Of a DNA stretch of 64,000 nt, positions 37,978 to 64,000 are shown in pieces. The notes under the pieces were generated by a model. It saw only the letters and a list, made by a program, of their open reading frames with translations, was not told where the DNA came from and ran no database searches. The position numbers and the translations under genes are program-made. How positions within the stretch are numbered: position 1 is the first letter of the stretch; every line of letters starts with the position of its first letter. The DNA lies in contig OZ281495.1 of assembly GCA_965637545.1 (NCBI GenBank), positions 15,314,001 to 15,378,000 of the forward strand. The letters run 5' to 3'. The DNA is from Phallusia mammillata (lineage: Eukaryota).

Positions 37978-39085
37978 CAACATAAGATATGACGTAGGTT
38001 GAGTGATTTGCGATGTTACAGTAATGGACCAAATAAATTATGGAATAGCCTGTATCATGTCACAGTTCATCCTTCCAATTCAATAGCAAAATCAGAAGAA
38101 AAAAAGATTTGTTTGAAATGATGTTTAGTTCGCAATTGCAACACGTTGCTGTAGCATTTGTCATTGCTTTAGCAACGTTTAAAAAATGTTTCGTTAAGTT
38201 TAACCATTTATAGATTTCAGCGGAAGCCATACACGCATCAGCACTTAGTTCACTTTTTAGTGTACTTAATAATTGACTGAAGTCAAGTATTTTAAAGACA
38301 CGGGATAGAGTGCCACCAATTTCCTTTAGCTCTGTTCGATCAATTCCACTTCCAATTCCAATAGCATAAACAATAATTCCTTCCTCCCGAGCCTGTAAAT
38401 TTATTTTTTGCATTTTAAGTTAAAATGATTTAGCATCATTTTCAAATATGTCTTTTACTTATTCGTGGTTCTAGCAACATTTTTGCGTTTGATTTTTTTG
38501 TTTTTGTCAGGTGGCTAAACTAACTGACGCGCAAATCCGAATCTAACAGCAATGACTTACCCTGTCCGACGGCGGTAGAACATCGTCTCCACTCTGTCCA
38601 TCGGTAAGAACAACCATAACGCGAGGAACTCCTGCAGAAGGCGGTCTGAGGCCAAATCTTTCATTGAAGCCCCTGTTGACAACTTCGTTTATGGCTCTTC
38701 CAGTGAGTGTTCCTCCTGTGTTGGAATAAAGGTAACAAAATGATCGTAGACAATTTGCACAATTAAAAACCAACCTCCTGGATATGTAGTTGTAAGGACT
38801 GTGTTTATAAAGGCGGCGTTGTTCGTGTGCTGGTTAAAGTAACTAATGATGTAGTGACGACTTGAATAAACTGAGAAACCGAAGCGAACAGCGTCAGGTG
38901 GAATCGAAAACTCGGATACAAGATTTGCGACAAACCGCAATGTCGTTCGGAAATTGTAGAATCCAATACTGCCCGAACCATCCACCAACAACCAAATGTC
39001 AAGTTTGGAAACGATGCAACCTATAAAATCGCAACATTATGAGCTATTTCTGTGCGCCCTATTTTTTCTTATCATTTGTTTAGGC

Positions 39086-39628
39086 CAGTGGTTCTTAACC
39101 GGTGGGAAATTTCCCACTAGTGGGAAATTTAATGATTTTAGAGGGAAATTATGTGAGTCAGAAGTTACCAAACTCGGGCCCGTAGGTTGAAATTAACCGT
39201 TGAAAGTTAATTTAATACAATATTTTCCGCAACAACATGTAAGATTTACTTCACCTAGTTTTACAAGGCGCATAAAAATCCAAAAATCGTTTGTTACGTC
39301 ACAGACATTACTAAAAGTATCAATGAATTTGTTATTGTTCGCCAATAAATGCATTTGATCTGTTGATTGTAATGCCATAAATGACTAATGCAAGCACATA
39401 AGATTTTTCAAAATTCCACACGATTTTACTTTCTCACGAAATCACTATTCAAACTAAATAAGATTGCAGTATACCTTTAAGGCCTCGACCAAATCGCTTC
39501 ACAAAACTATTTCGAATTCTTTTGTTAATGTTGGGCACAAAATATCATAAAAAAATAACAATGGATGAAATTCGAACTTGTTGATTTACTTTAGTGGGAA
39601 ACCACACCAAAAAGGTTAAGAACCACTG
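39086..39628. mobile_element. hAT-type MITE in an intron of copy A
   Basis: TIR CAGTGGTTCTTAACC / GGTTAAGAACCACTG, perfect 8-bp TSD GTTTAGGC. Confidence 0.93.
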
Positions 39629-40047
39629 GTTTAGGCGTTTTTTTTGTATTATGATTTTATATGATGGAAAATAAATCATAAAAGTTGTTATCACTGGATT
39701 TCCAATTGTAACTTATTGTTTTATGAGCGGAAAAGCCATCACCAAATGTGTTGCAAAATATGCGTAACCTGTACGTTTTGCCTGAATGATTCTTACCGTT
39801 ATGCATTTCACTTTTTGATAAATTTTTTGTAATAATTAAACTTACTTGCTGCGTTTTCATAAGAAATCACGCGATTCTCGTATTCTTAAGCAATTCTCTG
39901 TGGGTTGTAATTCCTTGCCCACCATGTTGCTTGTTTGGTGATCTCTATTGGTACATTTGCACCACTTATCAGTTGTAAGTGAAGACGAGCAGCAAGCGCA
40001 GATTTAAGTGGAAGCCTAAAATTGTGCGTATTTTTTTTAATTTGGAC

Positions 40048-40428
40048 CAGAGTTGCAAGCGGGCCCGAAATCTGAGCCCGAACCCGGCCCGAACCCGGCC
40101 CGAACCCGAAAGTATAAGCCCGAAGCCCGGCCCGAACCCGAAACGTTTTTGCAAAGCCCGTTTAGGCCCGAAATGAACAACAAACACAATGAACAGTAGT
40201 AGACAATGGAGTAAACAATACGTTTTAGACTAGGGTGGGCGTTAGGTCAATGCCAGAGACTTGTTACTTAGCTGAGTGATTTTTTTTTTTTTAAATGGCG
40301 GACACGGAACGTAAAGTCAGGCCCGTTTTAAGCCCGTTTTAAGCCCGTTTCCTCACAAATATACCTAAGCCCGAACCCGGCCCGAACCCGAACCCGGCCC
40401 GAAAAGCCCGGCCCGACTTGCAACTCTG
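40048..40428. mobile_element. hAT-type MITE with arrays of CCCGAA/GGCCCG repeats, in an intron of copy A
   Basis: TIR CAGAGTTGCAAG / CTTGCAACTCTG, perfect 8-bp TSD ATTTGGAC. Confidence 0.93.
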
Positions 40429-43009
40429 ATTTGGACTGCAAACGTTTGGTGGTGAGTGTTGCACGTATGTAAATAACTTTTGCAGTGGTTTCAAAATTTG
40501 CAGAAATAACCGTTTTGTTATATTTTTTTTCAAAATTATTGCGTCTGGGCTTTTTTTAACTTTCCTTGAAAAATAAGCGTTAAAAGGCTGAACGGTAAAA
40601 ATCGTGTAATAACTCTACCGGAAATCGGAACTGTAGAAGTCAGTAACGTTTGTCCCAAACACATTTCTCGCTGAGTCGAGGTAAACAGATAAAGATGACA
40701 ATGTCCTTTCGGCAGACAGTTGTGAAAAAATAAGTGGAGATATCTAATAAAAAAATTAGCAATTCATTCTAAATCCAAGAGGAAATGCAACGTATTGAAA
40801 GTAAACCTTATTCGAATAGAAAATAGATGATAAGCGTACTTACCAAATTCCACCCATTGGGTAGAGAATGTTCATTCCAAAATTTGTTTCAACCAAAGCA
40901 AGTCGTTTCATCATTCTTAAATCATTTGGAAACACATTGAGTGCTTCCAGTTTTTCAATCGATGCATCCACAACATCTTCACCACTCGCATCAGGCACCA
41001 AAGTCAAATCAACGGACTGTGCTCTGGAAAACGAAAGATTTTTGAATTATCAAACAAATGTAAATAAAAAGAAACAATTAAAATTACCTAAAATCAAATT
41101 AGAATTATGTATAAAATATCATAAAACGCTATACAAATTAAACAAATATTGTATGTTGTAAATAAATAGAAACAATTAAAATTACCTGGATATTGGTATC
41201 ATCAGTATGTTACTAACAGATAAGAGCAGGACTAGATACAAGTACATTGTCAGTGTTTTATTCTCGTTGTACTCTCCTCTGCTTTTCTTTTGTTTGTACC
41301 AAAGTACGTAAACAGCAACTTTGGATCCTAAAAACATTGCCATGTGACTCAATAATATAAAACCTTTTAAAACAAAAAAATAAAAGCGATTAACGCAAGA
41401 TACAGCTCAGTAAATTTGGATAAGTTTTAAGACACTGTAGTCAGGTAGTGTGTCACTAACATAATGGTTGGAAAACACCGCCGTATAAAATAGAATGTGT
41501 TTTGATTTGAAACCACGAACAACATATTTAAGGCCATATTACCTCCCTCAAGTAAAGCTAACGTTGATTAATATTTACAAAATATAAATTTAGCTTGAGC
41601 CATGTGAACTACCCTGCTCTGTACCGATCTCTGTAGTGAAATCTTGCAGAAGTGTTAGCAAACAGCATTTTGAAGTGGCCCAGGCTAATTGAAGGTCCTA
41701 ACTGACGACCAACTTAAACCAACTATTTTCCAACTATATAGATATTTATATTCAGCAAGTGATAAAAACGATTCGTTGACTTTGCAATGTTTCCTGCATC
41801 AATTTAATCAGGATGCAACGCGACTCTGCTGATTCAAGCCCACGTAGTGATATCATATTATGTGTGATGTAATTGGGTTCGCGCTGATAATGTTGAACGC
41901 TTTGACTGGAGTCGAATTCATATATGCCCCGGCATTGTAAAACAACACTCGGTACATTACTTGCCATTTACAACAGTTCCTCGCTTACTCTATACTGCTG
42001 CTCATTTACATTTGTCTATGAAATCTTTTCTCTAAAACAGGGATCGACAACCTCTGGCCCGCAGCCCCCTCAGGAAAGTGAAAACACCACTTTGCTGGTG
42101 GAAACTCTAGAATGGCATGAAAGCAAGAACGCTGTACCAAGCGTTGTTTAAAGCGTTCTGATCTAGGTTTCACAAAGATTTCATGAAATTAAAGTAGTTG
42201 GCAGTTTCACCGTTAAATATCTGTTTATTTTACACAATAAACAGTAAAGGGATCGAAAATTAACATGAAAAATTAGTACGGCCTGATACGACTTTGCTGA
42301 TTTTGGTTTTAATAAATGATCTACCAGGTAAAGTTATATCAGCAAAATTAATAACACAAGATCGTAAAAGTTGCCTTCTGTCTAATGCCTGGACAAGATC
42401 ACATGAACAGACCAGCACTTTGCTTTTGTAACACACTGAACTTGATAAGTTGTCTGTATTGACGTATTTCCTGTTTGGCTGGTTAAAAAATATACATTTT
42501 TTTATTATTATTATTATAGACGTTGCGTTGCGTGGTGATTACGTTTGGGACCAACGTTAAGTTTGGGGCCAACGTTTCACAATAGCACACAGTCGATTCT
42601 TCATTACGGTATATTTCTATTCGTTGATCATCTTGTAAAGTACAGTATTTTTAACGTCTGTGTTAAAAATAACTTTTAAATAGCATTGAAGACTAACTCA
42701 AAAAGCAACCACGCAAAGCGACTTCCGTAATAAACCATATTCAACTGCATTACGCCTTGAAAAAAATAATATTGTCATGTGATTTATGATTTATTGATTT
42801 ATCGGCCGCTCCTCGAAAGTAAACCTTAATACACATCATGCAACAAACTTACTTCCTACCGTTTGATTTGTAATTAAGATTATGTTAGAAGTTGCCATTA
42901 TTTACAGACCCTATAAAACATTCTTGTATGGCGAAAAGCTATACACAACGCAATAAAAATTAATGGATGCTATAGTCAATAAATTGTTATTGGATCCGTT
43001 TCCTCGCAC

Positions 43010-46000
43010 CTACTTTGTGTATAGCATTGCGAAAACAGAACTAAGCACAAGTGCTGGCGAATAAAACTTGATGTAAGAAGCAGCACTTGGTGTGGTCGTA
43101 GGTGTTGGGGCGGTGTTAACCTATAACACATTTTTAAGTTCAGTAAATAATAAAAAGGATAGCCTATTTATCAACACACGAAAAATCAAAATACACACTA
43201 CATGTGACGTCAGTTACTGTGAAGCACACGCACTGTAAATGACCGACAAAGTAATAAACCAACGCAAAATATGTTGAGTTTATTTTTGTCGAAAACCACA
43301 AGTAAACGACTGAATCAATAAACAAGGTTTATTCACTTACAGTAGCTCTGACAGGACTTCCAGTAGATTGAAAGTCGACTTGAAGAGATTCGTCGCTAGT
43401 CGATTTTAGGGCAACGTACAAAGGTTTGCTGCCAACTTCAGCATCAACTGCTCTACGTGATCTGGATTGTTCTCCGACCAACACCAAGCCCAAATTCAGG
43501 TCATCAGTGTTTATAGTAATAATAGTTGTCCCCTGTTAGCAATATGAGTGGATTAGTATTAATTGCATTTATCAAACACGATCTTAGCAAAACAAAAGCT
43601 CTTGGCGACATTGCTGTTTATTGTTTGAGTTGCAGTTTGCTTGTGGTCAGAGAATGATGAATTACTCACGGGCAAAATTATGATAGAGAAGTCGTACACA
43701 GCCGAGCTGGGATGTGAAACCGTTCCAGAAATATAAACGATGCCTGATCCACTACCGGTGGGAACACGAAATTCAAGCTCGACTGATCCGTTATTGGGGA
43801 GCTGAACACTTGAGTAGTATGTATTTCCTGGTGGCACGATCACTTCAACTGTTGTGTTGTCCTTGAAACAAATCACTGAAAAACAATTTGATGGTCTATT
43901 CCATTCACACCCCTTACCGGTATTTCGGCGGAAGCCATGCAAACACCAGAATTAAGTTGACCTTTAAGTGAACTTAACAATTGACTAAAGACGTTTAGTT
44001 CAAATACAAAAGTCGGAGTGCCAGCAATTTCCTCCAGTTCTGTTCTATCTATTCCACTTCCGATCCCAACAGCAAAAACAATAATTCCTTGATCTCGGGT
44101 CTAAAATTTATGTAAGCCTCGGTTTATCTGTGCTATTTCCCAACAACATGTGTTGTATTTACAACTTCCATCTAATAGACTCAGAATTAGCAACTAATAA
44201 AGACCTCTTCGATAAAAGCTCACCATGTTTGAGGGAGCGACAACATCGTCTCCACTCTGCCCATCAGTAAGAACAACCAGAACTCGAGGAGCTCCTGCTG
44301 AAAGTGGCCTGAGACCGAAAGTCTTATTAAAACCATATTGTACAACTTCAGATATTGCATCTCCAGTGAATGTTCCTCCTGTGTTACAAAAAAAGGTAAC
44401 AAAACGATTGTAGTCAGTTTGCACAAATAAAACCAACCTCCGGGATATGCAGTTGCAAGTACCGTGTTAACAAACACGGTGTTGTTTGTATGCTCGTTGA
44501 AGTGACTGATAAAATTATGACGACTTGAATAAACCGAGAAACCGAAGCGAACAGCGTCAGGTGCAATTGAAAACTCGGATGAAAGATTTGCGACAAACTG
44601 CAATGTTGTTCGAAAATTACTTGGTCCAATGCTGCCCGAACCATCCACCAACAACCAAATGTCAAGTTATGAAACGATGCAACCTAAACAAATAAGTTAC
44701 CGTACATACTCGCGGATAGGTCGCAACGTTTTCCTTAAATATTTTTTTAAATATAGGTGCGACCAATCCGCTCGACATAAGTGCAAATCGCCACCAAGTC
44801 GGAACAAAATTGAAAGTTCTCGGCTATTGCAAGTACCGTATTTTCTGGGTTCGGCTCATTGGGCGGATATAACGTATTTATTCGAGTATAACGCGCAAAA
44901 TTGTGTCCTAATTTTCAATAAAAAATTAGGGATGCGCGTTATAGACGCGAATTGTAGTGGAAATGTGCTATTGCAACTGTGGTTCTATCGAATACGGGTG
45001 CATGCGCTCGTGCACGCACATACCAATGCGAGACAGTTTCATGAGCGCACACGCACATGCGACCGCTCAGCGTGCGTTGGATTTTCCCGCTTTGTTGAGA
45101 AAAAATGGTTTTGCGGTTTCAATGCATTGCAGTTCAATGCTAAAAAAACAACCAATTGCACAGGTTATCTATGCAAAAAAGCTATGGAAAGGGCATTTTA
45201 AATCCCTAGATTTTCAGTGCGACTTATGTGCGAGTCAACTCTAAATTAAACTTTTTTAACACAAAACTAATAGTGCGACCTATACGGTGGCGCGGCCTAT
45301 CGGCGAGTATATACGGTAAGTGTATTGAGTTGAGCATTTCTCCTTTTCCTAATTAGTTTGTTGCAACCAAAAGTCATTTTGGCATAATTACATCACTGTT
45401 GTTTTATAACCGAAAAATGCGAACCTACTTAATGCGTTTTCATAAGAAATCACGCGAGTCTCGAAGTCTTGTGCGTTTCCTTGAAGGTTGTAGTTTGTTG
45501 CCCACCAATTTGCTTGTTGAGCGATTTCCACCGGTACGTTTCCACTGGCATCATTTATCAGTTGCAGGTAGAGACGAGCAGCAAGAGCAGATTTGAGAGG
45601 AACGCTAAAGATTTTGTTGGATTCTTTTTGTGAGAATTAAGATTACTTTACAATTTTAACTTTTAACGTTTTATATTGAAAGAACGGTTTAAAAAATATC
45701 TGAACAATTTCGTTTACGTTTGAGCCGCAATTTTTCATGTTCCAAAATTTCCCACATGTAACCTATGTCAAAATTATGGTAGGACAGGCCTATTATTAAC
45801 GTTGTACCGATTTTATCATAATTCAGCTAAAATGAACAGACTGTTACAGATACGTTCATTACTCGATTAGCCCAGAGGCGTTATGCCAATCTTAGTGGGA
45901 AAAAAAATACAAACATCCACTGTAACATCTTTATTGGCCAACTTAGCGTACTAACAAACTTTCAAGGCTTTTTAAACAATCGTTGCAGTTTATCTCTACA

Positions 46001-46756
46001 TTTCTTGGACCATGGCGTTTGGCGTCAAATTTATGGTGAGATAAAAACAAGCAACAAGTTACCGGAAGTCAGAATTGTTAAAGTTTGTAACGTTTGGTCC
46101 AAAAGCGATTCTCGTTTGATCGAGGTAAGCAGATAAAGAAGATTGGGCACTCGTGGCAGACAGTTGTGAACCAATATTTGAGGTAATCTAAAAACAAGAA
46201 GGATTGCAGGGAAGATCTAAAAACTTTTTGAATTTAATTTTTAACTTCGCCAAGTTAATTTTAACTGGGCAGTGGTTATGAGACTTACTTTCCAAATACC
46301 ACCCATTGTGTTGGTAATGTTCATTCCAAAATTTGTTTCGACTAAAGCAATACGTTTCATCAATCCAAAGTCATTTGGAAACACTTTAAGTGCTTCAAGT
46401 TTTGCAATCGATGCATCCACAACGTCTTCACCACTCGCATCAGGCACCAAAGTCAAATCAACAGACTGTGTGCTGTAAGAAAAGAGATTAATCAAGTAAC
46501 AACACTTACAATGGCAAAGGGCATTTATTTATTTTCAATCTGTTTTTTAGCCATATCATTTAAGGTTCAAAAACTAGCTATATAAAATTTAAAGGCCGTA
46601 TTTCTAAAACTCGTTTTGATTTTATTAATGGAATATTTATGTCCTTCAGCCAATGTTTCGACAAGAAACTTTGTTGAAAATCGAACACGTACGTGATTAC
46701 CTGGCACTTGGAAGTAAGCCGCAAACAACAAAAAGCAAGACAAAATACAAATACAT
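43010..46756 (-). CDS. Array copy B: signal - lysozyme-like - [TAA] - VWA - PPC-like(RSRR) - short stalk - GPI signal; 10 exons, one premature stop
   Basis: Signal MYLYFVLLFVVCGLLPSAS. RIALVETNFG...GGIWK; ALAARLYL...QQANWWATNYN. TCA TAA at 44667-44672 versus TCC AAA in A, C and D. The remaining exons are open to ...PALVLSSVFAMLYTK*. Confidence 0.8.
44700..45316. mobile_element. Tc1/mariner-superfamily (Tc2/pogo-like) MITE in an intron of copy B
   Basis: TA|CCGTACATACTCGCGGATAGGTCGC ... GCGGCCTATCGGCGAGTATATACGG|TA. A second TACCGTATTTT terminus lies internally at about 44834. Confidence 0.85.
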
Positions 46757-47680
46757 TTTGTTATCTTGTTTCTTTTTCTCTTTTCTCGACTGTGCTTTTC
46801 TCTGTTTCTCAAACTAACACACCAAGGACGATGCTCGAGTCTTTATACAATACTATGTCAATAATAAAGTCTTTTTTTGTTGCATTCTTTTGTGCAAAAT
46901 TTCCAAATCATATGACCAAATTAAATTTGTGGAACCGTCAGAAACAGTAAATTGATTGAACTAGTCAGGACAGGACCGAGTCTATGTGACATTTAATTTC
47001 AGCAAAAACATCGAGAATACAAAGCTCTTCGTCTTACTGGGATACCACAGGTAAACACAGTAACAATTTTCCTGCTCTTCAATTAAAATGACAGTTTTAC
47101 AAGATGGGTTTATAACCTTGTGGGCACCAGAAGCTTTCAATATGTGTACTTTTAACTGTTGTCACACAAAAAAACCACCAGCCCTCATCCTGAACTTTCT
47201 AAGCGGTCGCCCAACATAGTTTTGACGTTTATCCGATATGTGCCAAATTTTCAAGATTTATGTGGTTTATTGATAACACAAGTCAATGTCTTTGTACTTT
47301 ACATACCAAACATCATTATCGCCAAAAAATCTATATCTTTTTTTATATTCATGAATAAATTACATGTTTAAGTTTAACTGATCTTGTTTAGGTTAGACAG
47401 ATTAATAAACACGGAATATAAATGTAGGTTTCCTTATCCAAATTCAGCAAACGAAATTTTTGTTTTTACAGATATAAGTCACATTTTTATTACGAGGATA
47501 CGCCACTATGGGACAAAATCAAAGTTTTTTGCGTCCCCTTTTTTGAATGGTTTACTTAACATCGATGTATTAAAAACACTTGAAGTCAATTTCTGTTTGT
47601 TATTGGATAAATTGCAATAAAATCGCAAAAATTTCTTGGCAAATGGAAGCAAGATGATTGCCACGTTTCGTGACTTATTT

Positions 47681-47900
47681 GGTAGAGCTACTAACACTGA
47701 GCTTGGGCTGGCCCCCGGCCTAAGAACTTCTGATAAGTGGCGCAACAGAGCACAGTCGTTTATGGTGCTGTTACAGCAATTTAGGTTCATGGTAAGAATA
47801 ATTGCTGAGTCAGCACCATAAACGCCTATGCTCTTTTGCGTCACCTACTAGAAGTTCTTAGGCCGGGGGCCAGCCCAAGCTCAGTGTTAGTAGCTCTACC
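47681..47900. mobile_element. Foldback/Mutator-like MITE, almost entirely palindromic
   Basis: About 51-bp perfect outer inverted repeat extending imperfectly to about 100 bp. 9-bp flanking repeat GACTTATTT / GACTTACTT. Confidence 0.85.
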
Positions 47901-48544
47901 GACTTACTTAAACATTGCATCATCCAAACTTGTATGTCAAAGCTGTTCCTTTATTTCTACACGTGGTCCTTGGTCGGCAAGTGATGTTTTATTCGACTGT
48001 GAAAGAAGGGCTGTAGTAAAAATAACAACTTTGCTGAGGTTTAAATACCAACCAACCGGTTTTACAACCTATTAAAGTCTAAACGATAGAATTGTGACGT
48101 TTACATTACTTTTTTTAGTCCCTTTCCACGACGCCAATGTTTTGCCATTTGAAATAGCTTGGCTATTTTAAACGTCGGTAAGCAGAAATACTTTTGCTTA
48201 ATAGTTTACATTGTATTTAAAATACGAATTGCCAATCAAACTTGAACCAAAACTCACATACAACATCTTATCAGAAAGTGCCTCACACCGCAGCAGAGGA
48301 AAAGGTTGAGCCAGAGAAGTTTTAGGAGATCTGTAATAAAAAATGTTGAATTTTAATACATGCTTAGCGGCGATCAATATAATTTAATAATTGTTGTTTT
48401 ATAACAATTAAAGTTGTTTGCATCAAAGGAGGATAGCGTTCAATAATACTCGCATGGTTTTCGGTTCCTATCATGTATTATTAATCACGTAATAAAACAA
48501 GGTTTTAAGCCTATCGTCTACACTGTAGAGTCTACAGTGTAGAC

Positions 48545-49634
48545 CAGGGGTGGGCAAACTTTTCAGTGCAAGGGCCGCATTCAAAAGTTTATAATCTTCT
48601 CGGGCCGCATGGTATTTCACCAACGGCCGCCAATTGTTTGCTTGTTGTTTTGTTTTAAAACAACTGATGTAAAGAATAAGGTTTGTATCATATTATACCA
48701 TTTAAAGTCGCCTAAGATGCTCTGATTAACAATTTCTAACTTGTGCACAAGTTTAGCTGAACAGAGCTAAGTGTTTATGACGTCATAAACTGTATTGTGA
48801 CGATTGCAGTGCCCGTTTTTTCGCATTGTTTGCACATAATAAGCGGTTAAAAAGCCTGGCGCATATGGTTGCTAGACTGGTAATCTTTTTTCCAGTTCCA
48901 CGAAATTTGTTTTAGCAGTTTGAAAATCAAAATATTTAGCAAAATAGATTGCGGCCGCAGGTTGTGCACCCCTGCGCAAAATTATTACATAGTATATTTT
49001 CAGCTTTATGCAAATACGTTTGTTCATGATTGTACAAACAGTGGTTGAAACGCTACAATTGTAATTGTTTTTTTTAAAAAAACAAGCGTTTGTTGCAACA
49101 AAGGCTGAACCACGTTTTTTGTTAATGAAGTCCTTGTGTCAAAGTTTGGGCGTCAACAGTGCAAAGTGGGCTGTATTTGAAAACGTGAATCGCTTTTACT
49201 TTTATCGAACGAAGAAATTGTGTCAAGTGACGATTTGCATTATAACGTGGCAGGCTAAAGCACGTGAAAAGTATCTGTGTTTAGTTTCAAAGTATCGTGC
49301 TCAGTGTTTTTTTAAGGTGTTTCGGTCCCCCAAATTTCTCCAGCGGTTTCCCAAAATTTGGAAATGGCTATATTTTGGTATTTAAATGAAACACTTGCGG
49401 TCTCTTAAAACTACTTTTAGCGGTCACCCAAACTAAACCTTAAAAAAAAACTGATCGTGCGGGTACAGATACTGCACATGGCATTGGTATCGGCAAGTCA
49501 CACCCCCGGTATTTTTAAAACTCTGCGCCTGTGCTCATAGCACTATTCAGCGTTACTCGGAAACATTTGGCGGGCCGCATGAACTCCTTTGCCGGGCCGC
49601 ATGCGGCCCGCGGGCCGTAGTTTGCCCACCCCTG
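48545..49634. mobile_element. hAT-type non-autonomous element (~1.1 kb)
   Basis: TIR CAGGGGTGGGCAAACT / AGTTTGCCCACCCCTG, perfect 8-bp TSD GTGTAGAC. Confidence 0.92.
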
Positions 49635-49642
49635 GTGTAGAC

Positions 49643-49986
49643 GATACCGGAAAACACACAAAAAAGATAAAACAACATAACAGTGTAGTAATTAGTTCGA
49701 AGAAAATCGAATAAACTAGCGGGGCATTATTTACGTAGTATGTACAAAACGTTGATTGATAAAACACTGTAGACTCTACAGTGACAACTAGTAACTTATA
49801 GTGTAAGTGCTTCTCCAATACTAATTCAAGGCCAGTTAATATTGTATTTTTCAGCAACCAACCATTTTATCAATCAACGTTTTTTACATACTACGTAAAT
49901 AATGCCCCGCTAGTTTATTCGATTTTCTTCGAACTAATTACTACACTGTTATGTTGTTTTATCTTTTTTGTGTGTTTTCCGGTATC
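49643..49986. repeat. ~120-bp near-perfect inverted repeat with ~100-bp spacer
   Basis: GATACCGGAAAACACAC...GTTGATTGATAAAA (49643-49764) pairs with TTTTATCAATCAAC...GTGTGTTTTCCGGTATC (49865-49986). Confidence 0.9.
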
Positions 49987-50206
49987 TTTAATACTCCTTG
50001 TGGGCTGGGAAATGGGCAAAAAACGAGAAGTGAATATGCGTTTTTACATTAATTTATGGTCGGTTTGAAACTTAATGTTAAAGGTAATGTGGGGGACATG
50101 ACATATACTATTAGGCGTAGCTTGGTAGCAGGAAATGCATTATCCTGTGTGAATTAAAGTAAACAGCAAACAATTAGATGCCCTTGTTACTATGTTCTAT
50201 TTGCAC

Positions 50207-51320: not shown

Positions 51321-51658
51321 CAGTGGTGGCCAAACTACGGCCCGCGGGCCGCATCCGGCCCCCAGTCCTGTTTCATCCGGCCCGCCAAACACCTTGCCTG
51401 CTTTTTTTTTACTCCAGACTTTAAAAGGCTTCTTCAAAATTGTGGACAGTTTTTATCTCATTGATATATAAACCTTTTATTTAATACAAGTGTAAACAAG
51501 ATGGTGTTATTTATTGTTATTCTACTACAATATTATATATTTTAATAAAGATGGCAACCAGTTACGACAAATTTTACGTAAATCTCTTTTAATCCGGCCC
51601 TCCAGTGGCAAGACAGTTGCAAATTTGGCCCTCTGGTAAAAAAGTTTGGCCACCCCAT
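51321..51658. mobile_element. hAT-type MITE
   Basis: CAGTGGTGGCCAAACTACGGCCCGCGGGCCG ... AAGTTTGGCCACCCC. TSD is imperfect. Confidence 0.8.
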
Positions 51659-53415
51659 AGGCAAACACAATTGTCACATATTCAACGGTGTCAGTGATGT
51701 AATGTTCTGCCTTACAGTAATGTTCTGCCTTTTTCCCTTCGTTGTACGTCATACCGTTGTTACGTCACATAGCTGATTGTGCCGATATGTGGTGTGATGC
51801 TGTTTACATACGGGACATTCATTCTATTATTGAGTTGTTGAAAACACCACGTGTTTTAACTGCGTGTGGCTTGATATAAAATTACAACAGAACAAGTTAA
51901 GAAGTAAGGTGTCCGAACTCTCACTTGTATGCAAGGCAGGCAAACCGTGAAACAATAATAATAATGGAAAGCAAAGTCGTCAGAAATAGCGATTAGGCTA
52001 ATTATACCTCGGGTTTAAAACATGCACAACTTATTTGCTTACTTTCGGTTTTAGAAAGGAGTTGTAAAGCTAGTTCTACTGGCATGCATTTACGAAATAT
52101 AATGCATATGAGTATTAACAGTGTGTCAAAATATTCACGGATTTGAGAATATGTGTATTATTTTATTTACGAATGCAGAATATGTCGATCAAAGTGTGTC
52201 ACAGTATTACTTAAAACCTTTTCTCAAACATACATTTTACATTAATTTTAATTACAAAAAGAACAAGGATAATAAAAAATTAAATTGTAAACAATACTGC
52301 GGTGCGACAAAAGTAAAGTTTCGCTTTTTACAATTTTCAAAGTAAATTTAATCGACAATAATTAAATTTCGGTTGGATATGGAATTATCAAATGGTAACG
52401 AGACCATTTTTTTTTAAATCGACAAGCCGAAACACGACCATGCCAAGTTTTTACATATCTTATTTATGACAACCAAATTGTGTTTTGCAATTTCGTTTAA
52501 TTTAAACGATTAAATGGTAACGTTTACACTACTTTTATTAGTTCCTCCAAGTACACCACGTTAAATCATGTGTTGTCATTAAAGCTTTGTTATTAAAAAA
52601 CCCTGTACGAAGACAAAATTTATTAGTTTCCGATGAAACATTTGATCGACAATATACCATGTTTGTGGCTTTACCAAATGTTGACTGCAATAAACCAGTA
52701 TTTAATTATACGCTATATTTGTAAAATCTTTTACGGGTCTTAAGTTCAAACATAGAACTTTAACTATATAAGCTCGTTTTTGGGGTTTCCGAATTTAAAA
52801 ACCTAAGGTAGTTATAGCCATATAGGACGAAAGAAAACGTTTTGGCTTTATTTCTGGAATACCCAAATTTACACAACTAACATAAGAACATACTCCAGAC
52901 AAAGTCTGTGAATGCCGATAGGTGGCGCAAAAAGTACAGTTATCAAATTAGCTATGAGACTGGAGTGACGCCAGTGACATTTGCGTTATGGGTATTTATT
53001 AAAATTTGTCTGATGTAAGTTGTTCAGCATATTTTCCCACAAATTCAAATTTTGATAATCTCAACGATATTTTGTCTCATTAATGTTTTCGTTGTCTGAT
53101 TTATTTAGTTACAATGGTGGTTGGAATTTTGGAAATATATTGACAAGTGTAGCGGCCGTGATTTACACAAATCTGTGCATGACATTTAATACAATTACAT
53201 AACCTAATTACGTATCAACTTATTGGGAGTCCAGGTTTAAACTACAGGCACTTTAACGGACGTTTCAGCACTTTTACAATCAACTTTAGCATTCATGTTG
53301 TTATAGCTGCACATAATAAACTGCAATGTTAGCACATAAATATTTCAAAACTAATTATGTTCAACCACTACGAACTAAGAATGCTAAACAGGCTGCTCAC
53401 AACACAGAAAGAAAC

Positions 53416-53670
53416 GACTAAAAGCTTGACTGTCTGACTGGGCTGACTGGCCTGACTCCGACGGAAGTGTTTCACAAAATATATTTCCGATTGTCGGCGA
53501 TTGGGAAAGGCCTGACTGAAACACAGAAGGCCTGACTTGGGTGATTGAGAATTGGGTGTTGGTTAGGGTTGGGGTTGGGGTCAGGGTTAAAATCAGTCCG
53601 AAAATATATTGTGAAACACTGCCGCCGAAGTCAGGCCAGTCAGCCCAGTCAGGCAGTTAGGCTTTTAGTC
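53416..53670. mobile_element. MITE with ~75-bp inverted arms and a central telomere-like tract
   Basis: GACTAAAAGCTTGACTGTCTGACTGGGCTGACTGGCCTGACT / AGTCAGGCCAGTCAGCCCAGTCAGGCAGTTAGGCTTTTAGTC. Internal GGTTAGGGTTGGGGTTGGGGTCAGGGTT. AAAC on both flanks. Confidence 0.8.
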
Positions 53671-55215
53671 AAACCCGAAAGAAACTGGAAAACGTGGTCA
53701 GCAGTCTGCACAAGATTGCACCAGTAATGACATCACACGCATTGTTACGTTTGCGATTTCTCCACCAATAACTGCAGATGCTTTGTTACATCACAGTCAA
53801 TGAAGTCAGATGACTGCCGTAAACTTGAAACAGGAAAATAAAGCACATACAAGTAAATTCTCGCTGTAACAGCAAGCGACGGATCGATAATAATAGGCTA
53901 TATTCATCACTGCCACAAAGCTGACAAAAATTGGACCGAAACTGGCATCGTAAATTACAAAAAATTAACTATAGTAAAGCTGCGCAGTTTTACTGTTGAA
54001 AAGTACAGAACGGATATTCCAGTTTATAACATAATATTTAATACAAGTCTATCAGTGACCTTTTTTGTGTGAAGAGAGTGGAAATACAAATAATTCAGGA
54101 ATTTCAGTTTACTATTACGTCCGCTTTAACCGTTTCTAAATTGCTTTGAACAATTATCACAACTCAAACTACATACATTGTGACACAGATTTTGGTAAAA
54201 ACAACAATCATTAAACAAAGTACCAAATGCAAAAAGAATTTTTAGTCATTTTTATAATTTTATATGTTTCAAATGGCAATTTATAGTTCATTGAAACAGC
54301 TCATCCACAAAGAGGAATTGTAGGCCATACATACATATATTTGAAATTTAATGTTGCAAATGCGCGAGTATCCGATTTTAATGCGCAATAGTCTCATTAT
54401 TCTACGCAAAAGGGGGCCTATGTAAAACGCAAATAGAGGGTACCTGCTAACTGATGTTGCTTGTTTTTTTGTGTCGTCTTGGGGCAGCACCAAAAGTAAA
54501 AAACAAATTGTGATTTATCATAGGTATTAAGCAATGTCCATCACTTATGTGCCATGTATTTTGCGAAGACTGACTCATCATAACTTTGTTTATTCACAAA
54601 AGAAATCACGTTTGTGTTGAATGTCGTAGTTCCGGCCTCTTCGGTAACATCGAAGCAAACTAAAGCAAACAATATTTATGCAACCTTTACTGGGTTTTAA
54701 CTCAAAACCGTGTGTAAATACGATATTTGAATTGAATTCAGTTTCGAAACTATTGGACAAAACCTCATGTTTACTGATAAAACAAAAACATGTTTTGTTC
54801 AATGTCAAAGTTGCGACATGGAAACTGACAACAATGCCCCGGTAATTTCCAAGTTAAAAATATCCTCATGCGCAACTTTTTGTTGATGTCTGAAAAATGT
54901 TTTGGAATAACATATTGAATTCGACGGTGACTTGCAAAATTTAGTAATTGTCCGCGTTATACCGAGGTTGTTTGGCGTGGTAAGATCAAATACACTAAGT
55001 TGTACTAAGTTATGTACATTTACTAAACGATATTTCATTATGGCATGAAGCCAAACAATACCAATCTAGATGTTATAGCAAAAAATATTTATACAATTGT
55101 CCATACAAATGGGGATAACATTATAAGAAAATAAGATAATTATTCGTCACCCTTAAGTACAATACATGTACGTGTCGGTTCCAACTACATTCAGCTATAG
55201 CTACGTAACTTTTGC

Positions 55216-58200
55216 TTATAACGACAACAGGGTTGTGATCGTCAAAGCGACCAACAGATAAAGATGATAAAACATGCATGGGGAGGCGGCACTAGTTGTT
55301 GTTGACAATGTTTCACTCATAGTTGTTGCCAGATTTGTCGTAACTTCAGTGCTCATCGCCGTAGTTTCAGTGCTGGTCGTCACATTTTCATTGCTCATTG
55401 TCACGGTTTCCATGCTCATCGTTTCAGTTGCGTTTGACGAGGCGTTCATAGATGCAGTTACAACCTAATAATTTTCCATAAATTTCCATTCAGTTTATTA
55501 TTTTAGCATAATAATAGAGTCACTTACAGCAGCCCTGACAGGACTTCCAGTAGATTGAAAGCCGACTTGAAGAGGTTGATCGCTGGTCGATGACAAGGCG
55601 ACGTACAATGGTTTGCTGCCAGATTCATTATCAACCGCTCTGCGTGATCTTGAGAAAAACCCAGCCCAATTCAAGCTGCTGTTTAAATCATCAGAGTTGA
55701 TTGTAATAACAGTTGTTCCCTGTTGGTATAAGATGTAGGTTCTAACTGTATTGATTTTGTGTATCGCCATAAGTTACAACAATATATTTGTAAAAATTTA
55801 ATTGAATGATAAAGCACTTTTTGTGGCTTAGTTTATGTTTTCATAGGTTTTTTATTAGTAGTTTATTATTTAAAACCGTTAAGCAAGGTTGTATTGCTCC
55901 AAATATTAATGTATTTTTTATCAAACGTTTCGGCACATGAATGCGCAATCATTTGAACCTAAATTTCTAATACAAACAAAAGCATGCTGTTATTTACTGT
56001 AATAATGGCCTGTCTAATTATGACAACATGTTTTTCCCCAAAAAGTCATATTTCCAAACCAGCTTTGTTAAATTAGAACTTACAGGTGTTATTACAGCCG
56101 AAAAATCATGCACAGCTGAGCTTGGATTTTGAATAGTTCCGGAAATGTAGACGACCCCTGATCCACTGTCGGGAGTGACATGAAATTCAAGCTCAACTGA
56201 TCCGTTATTTGGCAGCTGAACACTTGAGTAGTATGTATTTTCAGGTGGCACGATCACTTCAACTGTCGTGTTGTCCTTAAAAGTAAGGATTTTAAGTTAG
56301 ATGTACTGAAATTCATATGCCACTAAACTTAGTTTAACATTATATCGTACCGGGATTTCGGCAGATGCCGTGCAAGCATCATTGCTCAGTTCACCTCTCA
56401 GCACAGTTATCAATTGACTGAAGTCATCCAGTTCAAATATTCGGCTTGGAACTCCAGCAATCTCCTCTAATTCATTACGATTGATTCCGCTTCCAATGCC
56501 AACAGCAAAGACGGTTATACCGGCAACTCGCGCCTGCAAGTTTGTAAAAATAATTAAGTGTCGAATTTTTGCGTATATACAAATCGGAGCATTTTGGAGT
56601 ATTGCAAAACTGACGAATACCGTTTTAGAAGGAGATAATACATCGTCTCCGCTTTGTCCATCAGTAAGAACAACCAGAGCGCGAGGAACACCTGCAGAAA
56701 GTGGTCGAAGGCCGAACATTTCATGAAAACCAGTTTGCACAACTTCGTTTATGGCGTTTCCAGTTCTTGTTCCTCCTGTGTTGCAATAAAGGTTACAAAA
56801 TGATCGTTGTCAGTTTGCACAAATATAAACCAACCTCCGGGATATGTAGTTGCAAGGACCGCGTTTTTAAAGGCGGTGTTGTTTGTGTGCTGGTTGAAGT
56901 AACTGATAAAGCAGTGACGACTTGAATAAACTGAGAAACCGAAGCGAACGGCGTCAGGTGCAATGGAAAACTCGGATGAAAGATTTGCGACAAACTGCAA
57001 TGTTGTTTGAAAGTTGTGTGATCCAATACTTCCCGAACCATCAACCAACAACCAAATGTCAAGTTTGGAAACGATGCAACCTTTACAAATTTACAAGCAA
57101 AAAATAAAATTACATATTATAACAGACACGATAACATGTGTTCCGAAACTAACCAGTTGCGTTTTCATGTGCAATCACTCGCTCCTGGAAATCCTGTGCG
57201 TTTCCTGTGAGATTGTAATAGGTATTCCACCAGTTTGCTTGTTGGTCAAGTGGCCCAGGAACACTTGTACCAGCCAACAGTTGAACATAAAGACGAGCAG
57301 CAAAAGCTGACGTAAGCGGGATTCTAAAACATATAACCAGTGCCGGATTAAAGGTCTGCTGGCCTGTAGGCACATTTTATAAGTGGCCCGAAAATCAGGG
57401 TTGCCAACTAAAAAATTAGAATTATCAGTGTTGCCAAATTATTGTCACAAAGATCATTGTTGCAACTATAACACAGGGTACCGTGCAAAAACTTGGTCAC
57501 ATGCCTAACTAAATGACAACTTTGCGCGTTTTCGCGATTGAAAACGCGTTAACTAGTTGTTGGGGGTCAATCTTACGGAGTAGATCGCTTTCTGGCTTTC
57601 AACACAAAAAATAATTATTTTGACAACATGACTAAATTTCTACTGATTTGTGGCCTGGATTCTTGACTGGCCTGTAGGCACGTGCCTACTTTGCCTAATG
57701 GTTAATCCGGCACTGCATATAACCGTAAATTAGACCATGGTCGTGCGTCGTATCCTACCCACTTTTACCTAAAATCGGGGTCGCCTGACAAATCAGTGAT
57801 ATTTGTTCCGAACGCTATGCTTGCTGGTATGAAATATTGACTCAAAGAAAGCAGAGCCGCGGGATCAGACAATTGGGATGAAATATCCGATGTGATCTGA
57901 AACACCAAAACGTTTTTAGTCGGAATACTAAAAAAGGTTGTGTATTTTTTCTCTTTAGCCTTTAGCATCACTATAGTTCATATTGTGTTATGAGACTTAC
58001 TTGCCAAATGCCACCCAATTCGTTGGCAATATCCGTTCCAAAATTCGTTTCGACTAAAGCAATACGTTTCAGCAATCCAAAGTCATTTGGAAACACATTA
58101 AGTGCTTCAAGTTTTGCAATCGATGCATCCACAACATCTTCACCACTCGCATCAGGCACCAAAGTCAAATCAACTGACTGTGTTCTGTAAGAAGTGGTCA

Positions 58201-58355
58201 TAAGTTTGTTTGTTTTTTCAATTTGCCCTTAATGACGTTGAAATTACTTTAGTTTTTACCCATTTTATGCTTAATTTTTTGTGAAACTTACACTTTTACC
58301 TTGTAACTTTAAACAAGTTGTATAGAATAAATGCCATTCCAACTTTGAAAAACAT
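55216..58355 (-). CDS. Array copy C (intact): signal - lysozyme/lytic-transglycosylase-like - VWA - PPC-like(RSRR) - Ser/Thr stalk - GPI signal; 10 exons
   Basis: Signal exon MFFKVGMAFILYNLFKVTR (phase-2 donor). KRIALVETNFG...GGIWQ; AFAARLYVQ...QQANWWNTYYN; MIDAS DGSGS/T/LTDG; FFSRSRRAV; ends SAASPCMFYHLYLLVALTITTLLSL*. No stops found. Confidence 0.88.
57338..57715. mobile_element. hAT-type MITE in an intron of copy C, next to the splice acceptor
   Basis: TIR CAGTGCCGGATTAA / TTAATCCGGCACTG, perfect 8-bp TSD CATATAAC. Confidence 0.93.
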
Positions 58356-58656
58356 TTTTGTCACAAAAAAAGTCTTTCATACGGACAAGAAAACTTTCTC
58401 CAACATCTGTATGGTCAGGGTGAGATACGGAATCGGTTTTATATAGTATCTGTGATGATCCAAGCTATGTACACAAATCAATTCATTGAATAGGTTGGAA
58501 ATCCCGTTTTCAACAAAGGGAACGTTCTTCGCGGAACTTTACAAAATCTGAAAACATTTGCTGTTTGCTTTCCTGGTGCCAGTAACGATAAATACACAGG
58601 TACCATGATAAGGCATACACAGGTACCATGATAAGTTGTGATAAGGCACACCAGTT

Positions 58657-60689: not shown

Positions 60690-61955
60690 TAGTATCAACA
60701 CAGGTTGTTTCCGGCGGAGATTCTCACTCGCTGTTGTTAATTCAGATGAACAGCCCAAATCTATTATCTCTGATGAGCTGCACTATCTCTGCTTTAGCTA
60801 GCACATACTTTTAAGCATTGATTTCCAAATCGTTTCGACCATCGTACCACTTGTAGAATTTGTACAATATTGGCATATGCATCTGATTTAATACAGGTCA
60901 TTTTGTGGCGTCCTAAACATGTTAAATGCGTTTAAACCATGATGGCACAGGAATGCATTATACATTGTATATCATACTTGCACAGGAAGTAGCACAAGAA
61001 GTGTCCCAAACCGAAATGTTTCGTAGTCGGTCGGCTTCGTCGAAATGTAACCTATCTCATGAAACATGGCATCTACTTATACCACCAGAGGTACCTGTTC
61101 ATCCGGGTACAAAACGCCACACAGATATGTGTTGTACAGGTAAACATCCAGAAACAATGGAAATACGACGTTTTTTTCATAGCCAATGTGTCGCACATCA
61201 AGTGAGATTATCTGGTTTACTTTATGAACACACGTCATACCTACACCTACATCCAAGGACCTTTACATATGTTTGACTATATACTTAATGTAAAATCGCC
61301 GGCACACAAAATTCGCAGCGCAGAAGCTTTAAAACTAGTATGTGTCGTCATCAAGAGTTAAGATGATCACGCGATAGATTAGGTTCATCAGGCAATAACG
61401 TACAGGTACATGTATTAAACGTCGCAACTTACTCACTGACGCCCGACATAGTTCTCAATAACAATATTTAACACGAAAAAAAACGCATTTCATTTAAATG
61501 TCGCAGTTTCCACTGTTATACCTTTACCTCAAAAGCAAACGATTTATATTTACAAAGCCTTTATTAGTGTTTTAAAGATAACAGCAGTACTATAGGTAAA
61601 TACGACAGAATGTGCGTTTAAAACTAGTAGACAGAAACATCAAGTTTGCTGATAAAACAAATACATTCCTATTCAATGTCAAAGTTGCCACATGGAAACT
61701 GAGAACATCAATGCCCCAGTAACCTACTTTCAAAGCAAAATTTATTAATGGTCTACGGATCTGAACATCAAAATTTTTCTTAAATGTGTGCTTAGCCTGT
61801 ACCAGGCTTTGAACCGCTACAATGAACGAATTTTTCATCAAATTGTATCGTTTTTTAATGCCCCTCAGCATTATTATAAATGTTAATTATGTACAAGATC
61901 CCGCTACGTTCAGCTCATAGCTATATATATATATTTCTATATATATAAGTTTTGT

Positions 61956-63799
61956 TTAGCAAAATGCCAACAAGGTTGTGAACGTCATGATAAATAACAG
62001 ATAAAGATTGTACAAGATACTTCGGGAGGCGGCACATGTTGTAGTTGATAATGTTTCACTCAAAGTTGTCAGCTTCGTCGTGGTTTCAGTGCTGTTATTC
62101 GCCACAGTTACATTTAAGAGAGAGTTCGTAGATGCAGTTGCAACCTTAAAATGTTTTAGTTAAGTTTGTACAATTGTTTAGCCTAAAAGCCGTTAACCAA
62201 ATCACTTACAACAGCCCTGACAGGACTTCCAGTGGATTGAAATCCGACTTCAAGAGGTTGGTTGCTGGTCGATGCCAAGGCGACGTACAATGGTTTGCTG
62301 CCAACTTCAGCATCAACTTCTCTGCGTGATCTTGAGAAAAACCCAGCCAAAATCAACCTGCTGTTTAAATCATCGGAATTGATTGTGATAACAACAGTTG
62401 TTCCCTGGTGGTAAAATATAAGAGTTAAACCTACTTAATCTAGCATATATTTCATCAAACAAGACATCTGTTATTTCTGCAAACGTTTTGTGCATAAATT
62501 GTCATTGTACTGTCTGTGTTTTAAACTATGTATCTGATTAAAACTTACAGATGTTATTACAACCGAGAAATCATGCACAGCTGAGCTTGGATTTTGAATA
62601 GTTCCGGAAATATAGACGATCCCTGATCCACTGCCGGGAGTGACATGAAATTCAAGCTCGACTGATCCGTTATTGGGCAGCTGAATAGTTGAGTAGTATG
62701 TATTTCCAGGTGGCACGCTCACTTCAACTGTTGTGTTGTCCTAAAAAGCAAGGATTTTATAAGTTCTGTCATTTAAGCCACTAAACTTAGTTTAACATTA
62801 TATCGTACCGGGATTTCGGCAGAGGCCGTGCAAGCATCATTGCTCAGTTCACCTCTCAGCACAGTTATCAATTGACTAAAGTCGTCCAACTCAAATATTC
62901 GGCTTGGAACTCCGGCAATCTCCTCTAATTCATTATGATCGATTCCGCTTCCAATCCCAACAGCAAAGACAGTAATTTCTTCCCCTCGCGCCTGAAAATT
63001 TGTATAAAATGTTTTCGTATCAACCTTTGCGCGTTGGTCGTGTTGGATCGTGTTGCACAAACTGGACGTGTTGCTGTTGCAGTAATGTTCTGCAGCAAAC
63101 CCTACCATTTCAGATGGAGCTATAACATCGTCTGAGCTCTGTCCATCAGTAAGAACAACCAGAGCGCGAGGAACGCCTGCAGAAAGTGGCCTGAGACCGA
63201 AAGTTTCATTAAAACCAGTTTGCACAAGTTCGTTTATGGCATTTCCAGTGAACGTCCCTCCTGCGTTGTAATAAAGGTCACAGAACGTCCATTGTTAGTA
63301 TATGCACAATACAACCAACCAGAGAAATATGCAGTTGCAAGGACCGCGTTGAAAAAGGCGGTGTTGTTTGTGTGCTCGTTGAAGTGACTGATAAAATTAT
63401 GGCCACTTGAATAAACCGAAAAACCAAAGCGAACAGCGTCAGGTGCAATTAAGAACTGGGATGAAAGATTTGCGACAAACTGCAATGTTGTTTGAAAATT
63501 GTCTGATCCAATACTGCCCGAACTATCCACCAACAGCCAAATGTCAAGTTTGGAAACGATGCAACCTTTATAAATCCTAGTAAATTAAAAATTACAAATT
63601 AAACTAATCCGAGCGATTCCGAAACTAACCTGTTGCATTTTCATATGCAATCACACGCTCCTGGAAACCCTGTGCGTTTCCTGTGAGATTATAATAAGTA
63701 TTCCACCAGTTTGCTTGTTGGTCAAGTGACGCAGGAACACTTGTACCAGCTAACAATTGAACATAAAGACGAGCAGCCAAAGCTGACGTAAGCGGGATC
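61956..63799 (-). CDS. Array copy D (5' part beyond window): end of lysozyme-like domain - VWA - PPC-like(RSRR) - stalk - GPI signal
   Basis: IPLTSALAARLYVQ...QQANWWNTYYN; DSSGS MIDAS; LTDGQS; FFSRSRREV; ends CAASRSILYNLYLLFIMTFTTLLAFC*. All visible exons are open. Confidence 0.85.
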
Positions 63800-64000
63800 C
63801 TAAAAAGCACCATTGGCGTAGAATATACCATTTGGCGTTTACAGATAACGTTTAGCTTTGAGTTTGACGTTTTTACATACAAATCAAAAGACATCATTTA
63901 GATCTCAGAGTTTGAGTGCATGACAAACATCTAATTACTTCCGGAAAATGTTTAAGCAAAAACGTTTAAGTAAAGAGCACCTTGTGCGTGTTATCTTACT

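What the first reader, a model, noticed from the sequence alone, without database searches (positions are those of the whole stretch)
38060..64000. Tandem array of GPI-anchored lysozyme-like/VWA/PPC-like surface proteins: candidate undescribed antibacterial or microbe-binding system
Seen: at least four head-to-tail paralogs built on a shared 10-exon plan. Each reads signal peptide, ~160-aa unannotated domain, VWA with MIDAS and flanking Cys pair, beta-sandwich, Ser/Thr stalk and hydrophobic C-terminus with no cytoplasmic tail. Established: VWA/MIDAS domains bind ligands via a metal ion, and this C-terminal pattern is a GPI signal. Inference: this is a surface module coupling a glycan-cleaving or glycan-binding head to an adhesion domain. 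The array shows birth-and-death evolution, as immune and mucosal gene families often do. I do not recognise this architecture as a named family.
Basis: partly seen in the sequence, partly recalled or inferred. Interest (0 to 1): 0.88.

Follow-up and report, generated by a model that had tools for sequence, protein, structure and literature searches.

The report
Surface-anchored phage-lysin-like enzyme gene array
This sea-squirt-like genome carries a tandem array of genes from a widespread but unnamed invertebrate family, whose proteins join a lysozyme-fold head related to probable phage cell-wall-cutting enzymes to an adhesion domain and a membrane anchor, so it may be an unrecognised class of animal lysozyme.

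Summary
The array is real but partly broken. It has six minus-strand copies, four touching the window. Only C and D are open. A is a truncated pseudogene, B has one stop, and E has a frameshift. A public run holds spliced transcripts that match D.

The unannotated N-terminal domain has a lysozyme-superfamily fold (modelled on the Clavelina relative) and keeps the helix-end Glu. It is homologous over its length to phage family PHROG 3108, which sits directly before holin and Rz-like spanin genes in phage PMBT28, where no other endolysin was found. The beta domain is a PPC/GOLD-like jelly roll with a furin site in a loop.

The same layout occurs in Clavelina, amphioxus, brachiopods, tardigrades and arthropods. 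Molluscs carry a chitin-binding variant. No Pfam family or paper describes the domain.

Best reading: a GPI-anchored glycosidase for peptidoglycan (about 55%) or chitin (about 25%). Activity, GPI anchoring and tissue are untested. The scan had notes on this window only, none on other DNA.

The parts
55216..58355 (-). Copy C, intact 10-exon gene, 584 aa. Exons: 58355-58300, 58184-58001, 57896-57769, 57323-57154, 57080-56835, 56775-56621, 56533-56351, 56275-56084, 55719-55528, 55464-55216
   Evidence: All introns GT-AG, one open frame. Transcription of C itself not shown.
58300..58355 (-). Copy C exon 1, signal-peptide-like (weaker than in B; contains a Lys)
   Evidence: Hydropathy only; SignalP not available
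57154..58184 (-). Copy C exons 2-4: lysozyme-superfamily domain related to phage family PHROG 3108
   Evidence: No Pfam hit; fold of the Clavelina relative matches MltE, GH23 and phage lysins; phage homology
58049..58051 (-). Codon for Glu64 of copy C, the candidate catalytic acid at the end of a helix
   Evidence: Glu in 88% of 130 family domains; model residue 45 at the end of helix 37-46; also Glu in phage homologs
56351..57080 (-). Copy C exons 5-7: VWA domain with intact MIDAS, flanked by Cys181 and Cys367
   Evidence: Pfam PF00092 above cut-off on each exon; motifs
55528..56275 (-). Copy C exons 8-9: jelly-roll beta-sandwich of PPC/GOLD/SIDT-ectodomain type
   Evidence: Model of the Clavelina relative; Z 10.7 SIDT2, 10.0 collagenase collagen-binding domain
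55639..55650 (-). Furin-type site RSRR of copy C; the matching region of the Clavelina model is a disordered loop between strands
   Evidence: present in B, C, D, E, F and the C6 copy
55216..55464 (-). Copy C exon 10: Ser/Thr stalk and GPI-signal-like hydrophobic end, no cytoplasmic tail
   Evidence: 46% Ser/Thr, terminal hydropathy 2.2; no GPI predictor run
61956..63799 (-). Copy D exons 4-10 (exons 1-3 lie beyond the window, at 65550-64010 in extended coordinates); intact, 565 aa, transcribed and spliced
   Evidence: run X4 contigs differ from C exactly as D does in six exon segments, and one lacks intron 6
43010..46756 (-). Copy B, 10 exons, one premature TAA at 44669-44667 at the start of the VWA exon; otherwise open
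38210..41247 (-). Copy A, pseudogene: exons 1-7 only, TAA at 40842-40840 and 39888-39886, no donor after exon 7
37814..37978 (+). Inverted, internally deleted fragment of exon 5 just past copy A
   Evidence: blastn 74-79% to exon 5 of four copies

Best explanation
The array is a local birth-and-death expansion of an old, unnamed invertebrate family. Each intact gene makes a secreted, probably GPI-anchored protein. Its head is a lysozyme-superfamily glycosidase with one conserved Glu, of the same family as phage PHROG 3108 proteins, and most likely cuts the beta-1,4 glycan backbone of bacterial peptidoglycan at an epithelial or mucous surface. The VWA domain binds a metal-dependent protein ligand and positions the enzyme. 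The jelly roll and Ser/Thr stalk hold it off the membrane. Furin-type cutting in the jelly-roll loop nicks the chain between the enzyme part and the anchored part and may allow release. Shown: gene structure, spliced transcript of D, domain order, fold class (on a relative), Glu conservation, phage homology and phage gene context. Inferred: catalysis, substrate, GPI anchor, furin cleavage, tissue and immune role.
For: Fold: AF2 model pLDDT 94.5. The top 41 VIA rows are all lysozyme-superfamily-type glycan enzymes, best MltE Z 8.4. Atlas neighbours are phage hypotheticals and SLT proteins; BFVD best TM 0.75 to a phage protein. Weak Pfam SLT match over the Glu region. Glu kept in 88% of domains and in all six array copies. 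Phage link: 50 of 100 family members hit phrog_3108, best E 6.6e-22; huge-phage protein matches the family profile at 99.5% probability; the family HMM finds six phage proteins at E 1e-8 to 1e-27. In PMBT28 the homolog directly precedes a holin (phrog_785, E 6.6e-27) and an Rz-like spanin (phrog_89, E 1.1e-5); no endolysin is annotated and none was found among 16 other non-structural proteins screened. It is also next to a holin in VLCpiS6a. Purifying selection, dN/dS 0.24-0.38. Spliced transcript of D. Furin site in 11 of 21 GPI-like relatives and 0 of 17 long-tailed ones.
Against: No activity data for any member, phage or animal. Structural Z-scores are middling (8.4-8.6) and Foldseek found nothing at E<=0.001. 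A GH23 chitinase scores almost as well (Z 8.1), and mollusc and annelid relatives carry chitin-binding CBM14 domains. The ascidian branch is long and has replaced family-conserved aromatics (Trp at position 113 and Tyr at 127 of copy C). About 12% of domains lack the Glu, including this genome's C7 paralog. In some marine phages the homolog lies among tail genes, not lysis genes. The window's single exons do not hit phrog_3108 on their own. The fold was predicted on a relative that is 45% identical over the whole protein.
Confidence: 0.55

Rival explanations
1. The head is a chitinase or chitin-remodelling enzyme that works on the animal's own chitin-containing mucus net, gut membrane or cuticle; the VWA ties it to matrix proteins.
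For: Ralstonia GH23 chitinase is Foldseek's top row and Z 8.1 by VIA. Mollusc and Owenia relatives carry CBM14 chitin-binding domains. Named hits come mostly from chitin-making invertebrates, and no vertebrate appeared among them. That ascidian gut membranes contain chitin is from my own knowledge.
Against: The nearest non-animal relatives are phage proteins beside holin and spanin genes, where the target is peptidoglycan. CBM14 could anchor an antibacterial enzyme to a chitin barrier rather than mark its substrate. The array copies have no CBM14.
Confidence: 0.25
2. The head is a non-catalytic glycan-binding module, so the protein is a microbe-binding or matrix-adhesion receptor.
For: Glu is replaced in about 12% of relatives and in the C7 paralog. 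The ascidian copies diverge at conserved aromatics. VWA and collagen-binding-like folds are typical adhesion modules.
Against: Glu, Arg59, the Gly-Gly-Ile-Trp motif and the Gln-Trp-Tyr motif are kept from phages to all array copies. A pure binder would not need to keep the acid over that distance.
Confidence: 0.15
3. The protein is a digestive enzyme for ingested bacteria in a filter feeder, with no immune regulation.
For: Relatives are common in filter, deposit and soil feeders (Clavelina, amphioxus, Lingula, bivalves, springtails, mites). This shares the enzyme mechanism of the best explanation and differs only in role.
Against: A GPI-type anchor, VWA and furin site are more than a luminal digestive enzyme needs. 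A sap-feeding insect (Bemisia) also has the full layout.
Confidence: 0.05

Closest known systems
Uncharacterised invertebrate head-VWA-jelly roll proteins (Clavelina XP_076802244.1, Ciona XP_002129255.2, Branchiostoma XP_066303182.1, Paramacrobiotus XP_055347485.1, Lingula, Bemisia, Orchesella)
   Same: Same domain order. 45-46% identity to Clavelina over about 500 aa, 32-34% to amphioxus and tardigrades. Also in tandem in Clavelina.
   Different: None has a functional name; labels such as COL22A1 or matrilin-like come from the VWA only. The array copies have a longer Ser/Thr stalk. Ciona, mollusc and some Clavelina relatives have long C-terminal extensions (CBM14, pentraxin, Cys-rich) instead of the anchor.
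Phage family PHROG 3108 (phiKO2 gp54, PMBT28 AUZ95556.1, a 203-aa protein of huge phage LR756504)
   Same: Whole-domain homology with the same Glu, the Gly-x-x-Gln motif and the Trp-x-x-x-Tyr/Trp-Asn motif.
   Different: Stand-alone proteins with no signal peptide, VWA or anchor; listed as unknown function. Endolysin role is inferred here from gene context only.
GH23 lytic transglycosylases (MltE, Slt70, phiKZ gp144) and Ralstonia GH23 chitinase
   Same: Lysozyme-superfamily fold, Z 7-8.6, with a Glu at the end of a helix.
   Different: 10-14% identity; Pfam SLT score 13.3 against a cut-off of 21.3.
Animal c-, g- and i-type lysozymes
   Same: Same superfamily: leech destabilase Z 6.5, salmon g-type Z 5.5. 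Ascidians have g-type lysozymes (my own knowledge).
   Different: No Pfam match to those families in 100 members. They are small soluble proteins, not VWA-linked and anchored.
Molluscan VWA plus chitin-binding matrix proteins (BMSP, Pif; recalled from memory)
   Same: VWA in an extracellular protein; the mollusc relatives here also have CBM14.
   Different: The array copies have no CBM14. Whether BMSP or Pif carry this head domain was not tested; I do not recall that they do.

Membership tests
Lysozyme superfamily (fold level) | Lysozyme-like core fold | tested here: met
   On the Clavelina relative: top 41 VIA rows are lysozyme-superfamily-type, best Z 8.4; Atlas TM 0.52-0.69 to SLT-type clusters. 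Individual Z values are middling.
Lysozyme superfamily (fold level) | Acidic catalytic residue at the C-terminal end of the first core helix | tested here: inconclusive
   Glu64 is at the end of helix 37-46 and 88% conserved; residue-level superposition on MltE Glu64 was not given by the tools.
GH23 / Pfam SLT (PF01464) | Score above the curated cut-off | tested here: not met
   13.3 bits against 21.3; 6 of 100 members hit at E<=0.1, best E 0.0074.
Animal c-, g-, i-type lysozymes | Match to their Pfam models | tested here: not met
   No such family among hits for 100 members or window exons.
PHROG 3108 | Profile match over the domain | tested here: met
   Met at family level: 50 of 100 members, best E 6.6e-22. 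Not met by the window's single exons or by the Clavelina protein alone; the joined domain was not submitted.
Muramidase or lytic transglycosylase (function) | Cleavage of peptidoglycan | not testable with these tools
   Only gene context of phage homologs.
VWA domain (PF00092) | Pfam score above cut-off and MIDAS residues | tested here: met
   54.4, 35.5 and 27.1 bits against 23.8 on exons 5-7; DxSxS, T and D present in B, C, D.
PPC domain (Pfam) | Sequence match to PPC models | tested here: not met
   No PPC hit on exons 8-9 or full-length relatives. Fold resembles PPC, GOLD and SIDT ectodomains about equally, Z 9-10.7.
GPI-anchored proteins | N-terminal signal, small-residue omega region, terminal hydrophobic stretch, no tail | tested here: inconclusive
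   Pattern and hydropathy fit and recur in 21 dereplicated relatives; no GPI predictor or PI-PLC test.
Molluscan VWA-chitin-binding matrix proteins | CBM14 chitin-binding domain | tested here: not met
   No room for one: the chain ends in a stalk and hydrophobic tail after the jelly roll; none in the Clavelina relative by Pfam.

The most novel reading that the evidence does not exclude
An unrecognised class of animal lysozyme, shared with phage lysins by an ancient transfer near the base of animals or bilaterians, fused to VWA and displayed on surfaces by a GPI anchor with furin-controlled release, kept across invertebrates and apparently absent from vertebrates. The same result would identify PHROG 3108 as a new endolysin family.
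Probability: 0.45. Interest if true: 0.85.

Novelty: new variant of a known kind. Interest (0 to 1): 0.7.

Why it matters
Animal lysozymes are usually sorted into c-, g- and i-types plus a few lineage-limited acquisitions (my own knowledge). A further family, present from tunicates and amphioxus to tardigrades, arthropods, brachiopods and molluscs, membrane-anchored and related to phage proteins, would extend invertebrate surface immunity and give a function to many 'VWFA domain-containing' annotations. It would also name the missing endolysin of phages such as PMBT28. One Glu-to-Gln experiment on the animal domain and on the phage protein tests both claims. The tandem array by itself is ordinary gene-family turnover.

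Tried and rejected
Sequence search of the PDB with exons 2 and 4 gave nothing meaningful. Foldseek against the PDB had no hit at E<=0.001. NCBIfam gave no relevant family. These are weak searches, so presence in bacteria is not settled. A phrog_3108 search of this genome rang nowhere, controls included, so it is uninformative. Ten literature searches found no description of the family; two near hits were read and are unrelated (PMC3390340, PMC7824862). The phiKO2 genome paper was not held. Rejected: a lineage-specific new family (relatives across invertebrates); all copies functional (stops, frameshift, truncation); positive selection over the whole gene (dN/dS 0.24-0.38); stand-alone head-only animal proteins as a class (the three checked are exon fragments followed by VWA ORFs in eukaryote-like contigs); contamination (spliceosomal introns, chromosome-scale contig, neighbours such as TAMM41). 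Joined translations were built only inside local scripts, to check frames and to compare with already fetched proteins.
Full report
Setting. The window is G000:C2:15314001-15378000 of a 240-Mb animal genome. The closest relatives of the genes are ascidian (Clavelina lepadiformis, 45-46% identity), so the organism is probably another ascidian; I did not identify it.

Observation. A six-frame self-comparison showed repeated minus-strand exons from 38.2 to 64 kb. I built models with all introns GT-AG and the same phases in every copy. Copy C (58355-55216) is open for 584 aa. Copy D is open for 565 aa, with exons 1-3 beyond the window. Copy B has one TAA at 44669-44667, five codons into the VWA exon. 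Copy A has two TAA codons, lacks a donor after exon 7 and has no exons 8-10; an inverted, deleted piece of exon 5 lies beside it. Searching the genome exon by exon gave two more copies upstream: E, with one extra base in a T run in exon 5, and F, diverged and open through exon 9. An intact 9-exon, 529-aa copy lies on C6, and two distant paralogs lie on C7 and C8; the C7 one has Gln for the key Glu.

Expression. Contigs of run X4 (labelled as probably RNA) lie only on exons of the gene, apart from a high-copy intron repeat. One contig joins exon 6 to exon 7 and is shorter than the genome by exactly the 87-nt intron of C. In six exon segments the number of differences from C (16, 9, 8, 21, 10, 7) equals the C-to-D difference exactly. 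D is therefore transcribed and spliced as modelled at that junction. Depth is low, tissue is unknown, and C itself was not seen.

Evolution of the array. Overall dN/dS between copies is 0.24-0.38. Synonymous distance between the A/B and C/D/E groups is about 1 or more, often saturated, in exons 3-4 but only 0.11-0.40 in exon 2, and D and E are nearly identical in exon 3 (dS 0.04). This mosaic points to gene conversion (inference). The array forms one clade next to the Clavelina genes in a quick tree; the careful tree did not finish.

Family. Exon 2 found 161 representatives at E<=0.001. Of all proteins fetched, 89 have the head plus VWA and 72 also have the beta domain. Named members come from Clavelina, Ciona, Branchiostoma, Lingula, tardigrades, Bemisia, springtails, mites, chiton, gastropods, bivalves and Owenia. 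No vertebrate was among them, but absence was not tested rigorously. Three tails recur: a short GPI-like end, long extensions (CBM14, pentraxin, Cys-rich), or none. Tandem copies occur elsewhere too. All named members are 'uncharacterized' or labelled from the VWA alone.

Head domain. No Pfam family passes its cut-off. AlphaFold on the Clavelina domain with 100 aligned relatives gave pLDDT 94.5. The top 41 structural matches are lytic transglycosylases, glucosaminidases, phage lysins, GH19/GH23 chitinases, g- and i-type lysozymes and related enzymes, best MltE at Z 8.4, rmsd 3.4 over 129 residues. No single Z is high; the uniform list is the evidence. Glu64 lies at the end of a helix, is followed by a Gly-Gly-Ile-Trp-Gln motif, and is kept in 88% of 130 domains. 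From established knowledge of the superfamily this is where the catalytic acid sits, but a residue-level superposition was not available.

Phage link. Half of the family members hit PHROG 3108, a family of unknown function. A 203-aa protein of a 636-kb phage is 38% identical to an animal domain and matches the family profile at 99.5%. It leads to phiKO2 gp54, PMBT28, VLCpiS6a and marine phage proteins, which the animal-derived HMM also finds at E 1e-8 to 1e-15 with the Glu aligned. In PMBT28 the gene order is homolog, holin, Rz-like spanin. The genome has no annotated endolysin, and 16 other non-structural proteins of 120 aa or more matched no lysis family. VLCpiS6a has the same order with a holin. 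In Vibrio and Shewanella phages the homolog lies among tail genes, which would fit a virion lysin. The phage proteins fall on one side of a well-supported branch (SH-aLRT 99), so the link is old; the direction of transfer is not determined.

C-terminal part. The VWA passes Pfam on three exons and has an intact MIDAS. Copy F has lost both flanking Cys, which fits a disulphide pair (inference). Exons 8-9 form one jelly roll, with SIDT ectodomains, collagenase collagen-binding (PPC) domains and GOLD domains tied at Z 9-10.7. A furin-type RxR/KR site lies in a disordered loop before the last two strands, so cleavage would nick the domain, with those strands staying on the anchored half. The site is in B, C, D, E, F and the C6 copy. 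Among dereplicated relatives it is in 11 of 21 GPI-like proteins and 0 of 17 long-tailed ones (Fisher p 3e-4). The long-tailed set is mostly molluscs, so the counts are not independent and the p-value overstates the case.

Mechanism. Most likely the protein is a surface-displayed, single-Glu glycosidase acting on peptidoglycan (0.55), positioned by the VWA and possibly released after furin cutting. Chitin remodelling (0.25) is the main rival because of the CBM14 fusions and the GH23 chitinase match. A non-catalytic binder (0.15) and a purely digestive role (0.05) follow. None of the biochemical steps is shown.

Novelty. Ten literature searches found no description of the domain, the architecture or PHROG 3108; the library lacks most subscription journals. 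I class it as a new variant of a known kind: an unnamed family within the lysozyme superfamily, in an undescribed architecture. The array itself is ordinary turnover. Three scan notes on this same window agree with points I tested independently; no note on other DNA matched.

Limits. SignalP and GPI predictors were not available.

Noticed in passing
window 2589-3725 (+): Single 378-aa open frame matching mitochondrial phosphatidate cytidylyltransferase TAMM41 (PF09139, E 1e-105), apparently without introns.
   Followed up: partly
window 9828-10217 (+): ORF with a weak match to the eIF2B-epsilon LbH domain (E 0.0024); probably an exon of a larger gene.
   Followed up: no
window 57338-57715: Very high-copy repeat in intron 3 of copy C (contig depth about 1e5 in DNA-like runs); looks like a MITE or SINE.
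   Followed up: no
window 40050-40440: Element with GC-rich inverted ends made of short repeated units, inserted in intron 3 of copy A.
   Followed up: no
window 47500-48070, 49450-50060, 51200-51470, 53370-53720: Several inverted-repeat elements in the 8.4-kb spacer between copies B and C, which holds no gene copy.
   Followed up: no
window 19700-20240 and 30400-30870: Inverted duplicated stretch about 10 kb apart, seen in the six-frame self-comparison.
   Followed up: no
window 44669-44667: The stop in copy B falls at the head/VWA boundary; if the transcript escaped decay it would give a secreted head-only protein with its Glu intact.
   Followed up: partly
L037 (PMBT28) 46661-47158; L031 (phiKO2) 3396-3887: PHROG 3108 proteins are candidates for the unannotated endolysin of these phages.
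   Followed up: partly
L029 (huge phage LR756504) 5935-6546: The closest phage relative lies between ribonucleotide reductase and type II topoisomerase genes; the record has three matching places, two not examined.
   Followed up: partly
P0168: A head domain without the Glu fused behind a Death domain (PF00531), with no signal peptide; may be a gene-calling chimera.
   Followed up: no
model mbd3bf16e1325: The jelly roll also resembles PliG, a bacterial inhibitor of g-type lysozyme (Z 8.3); self-inhibition relieved by furin is a speculative possibility.
   Followed up: no
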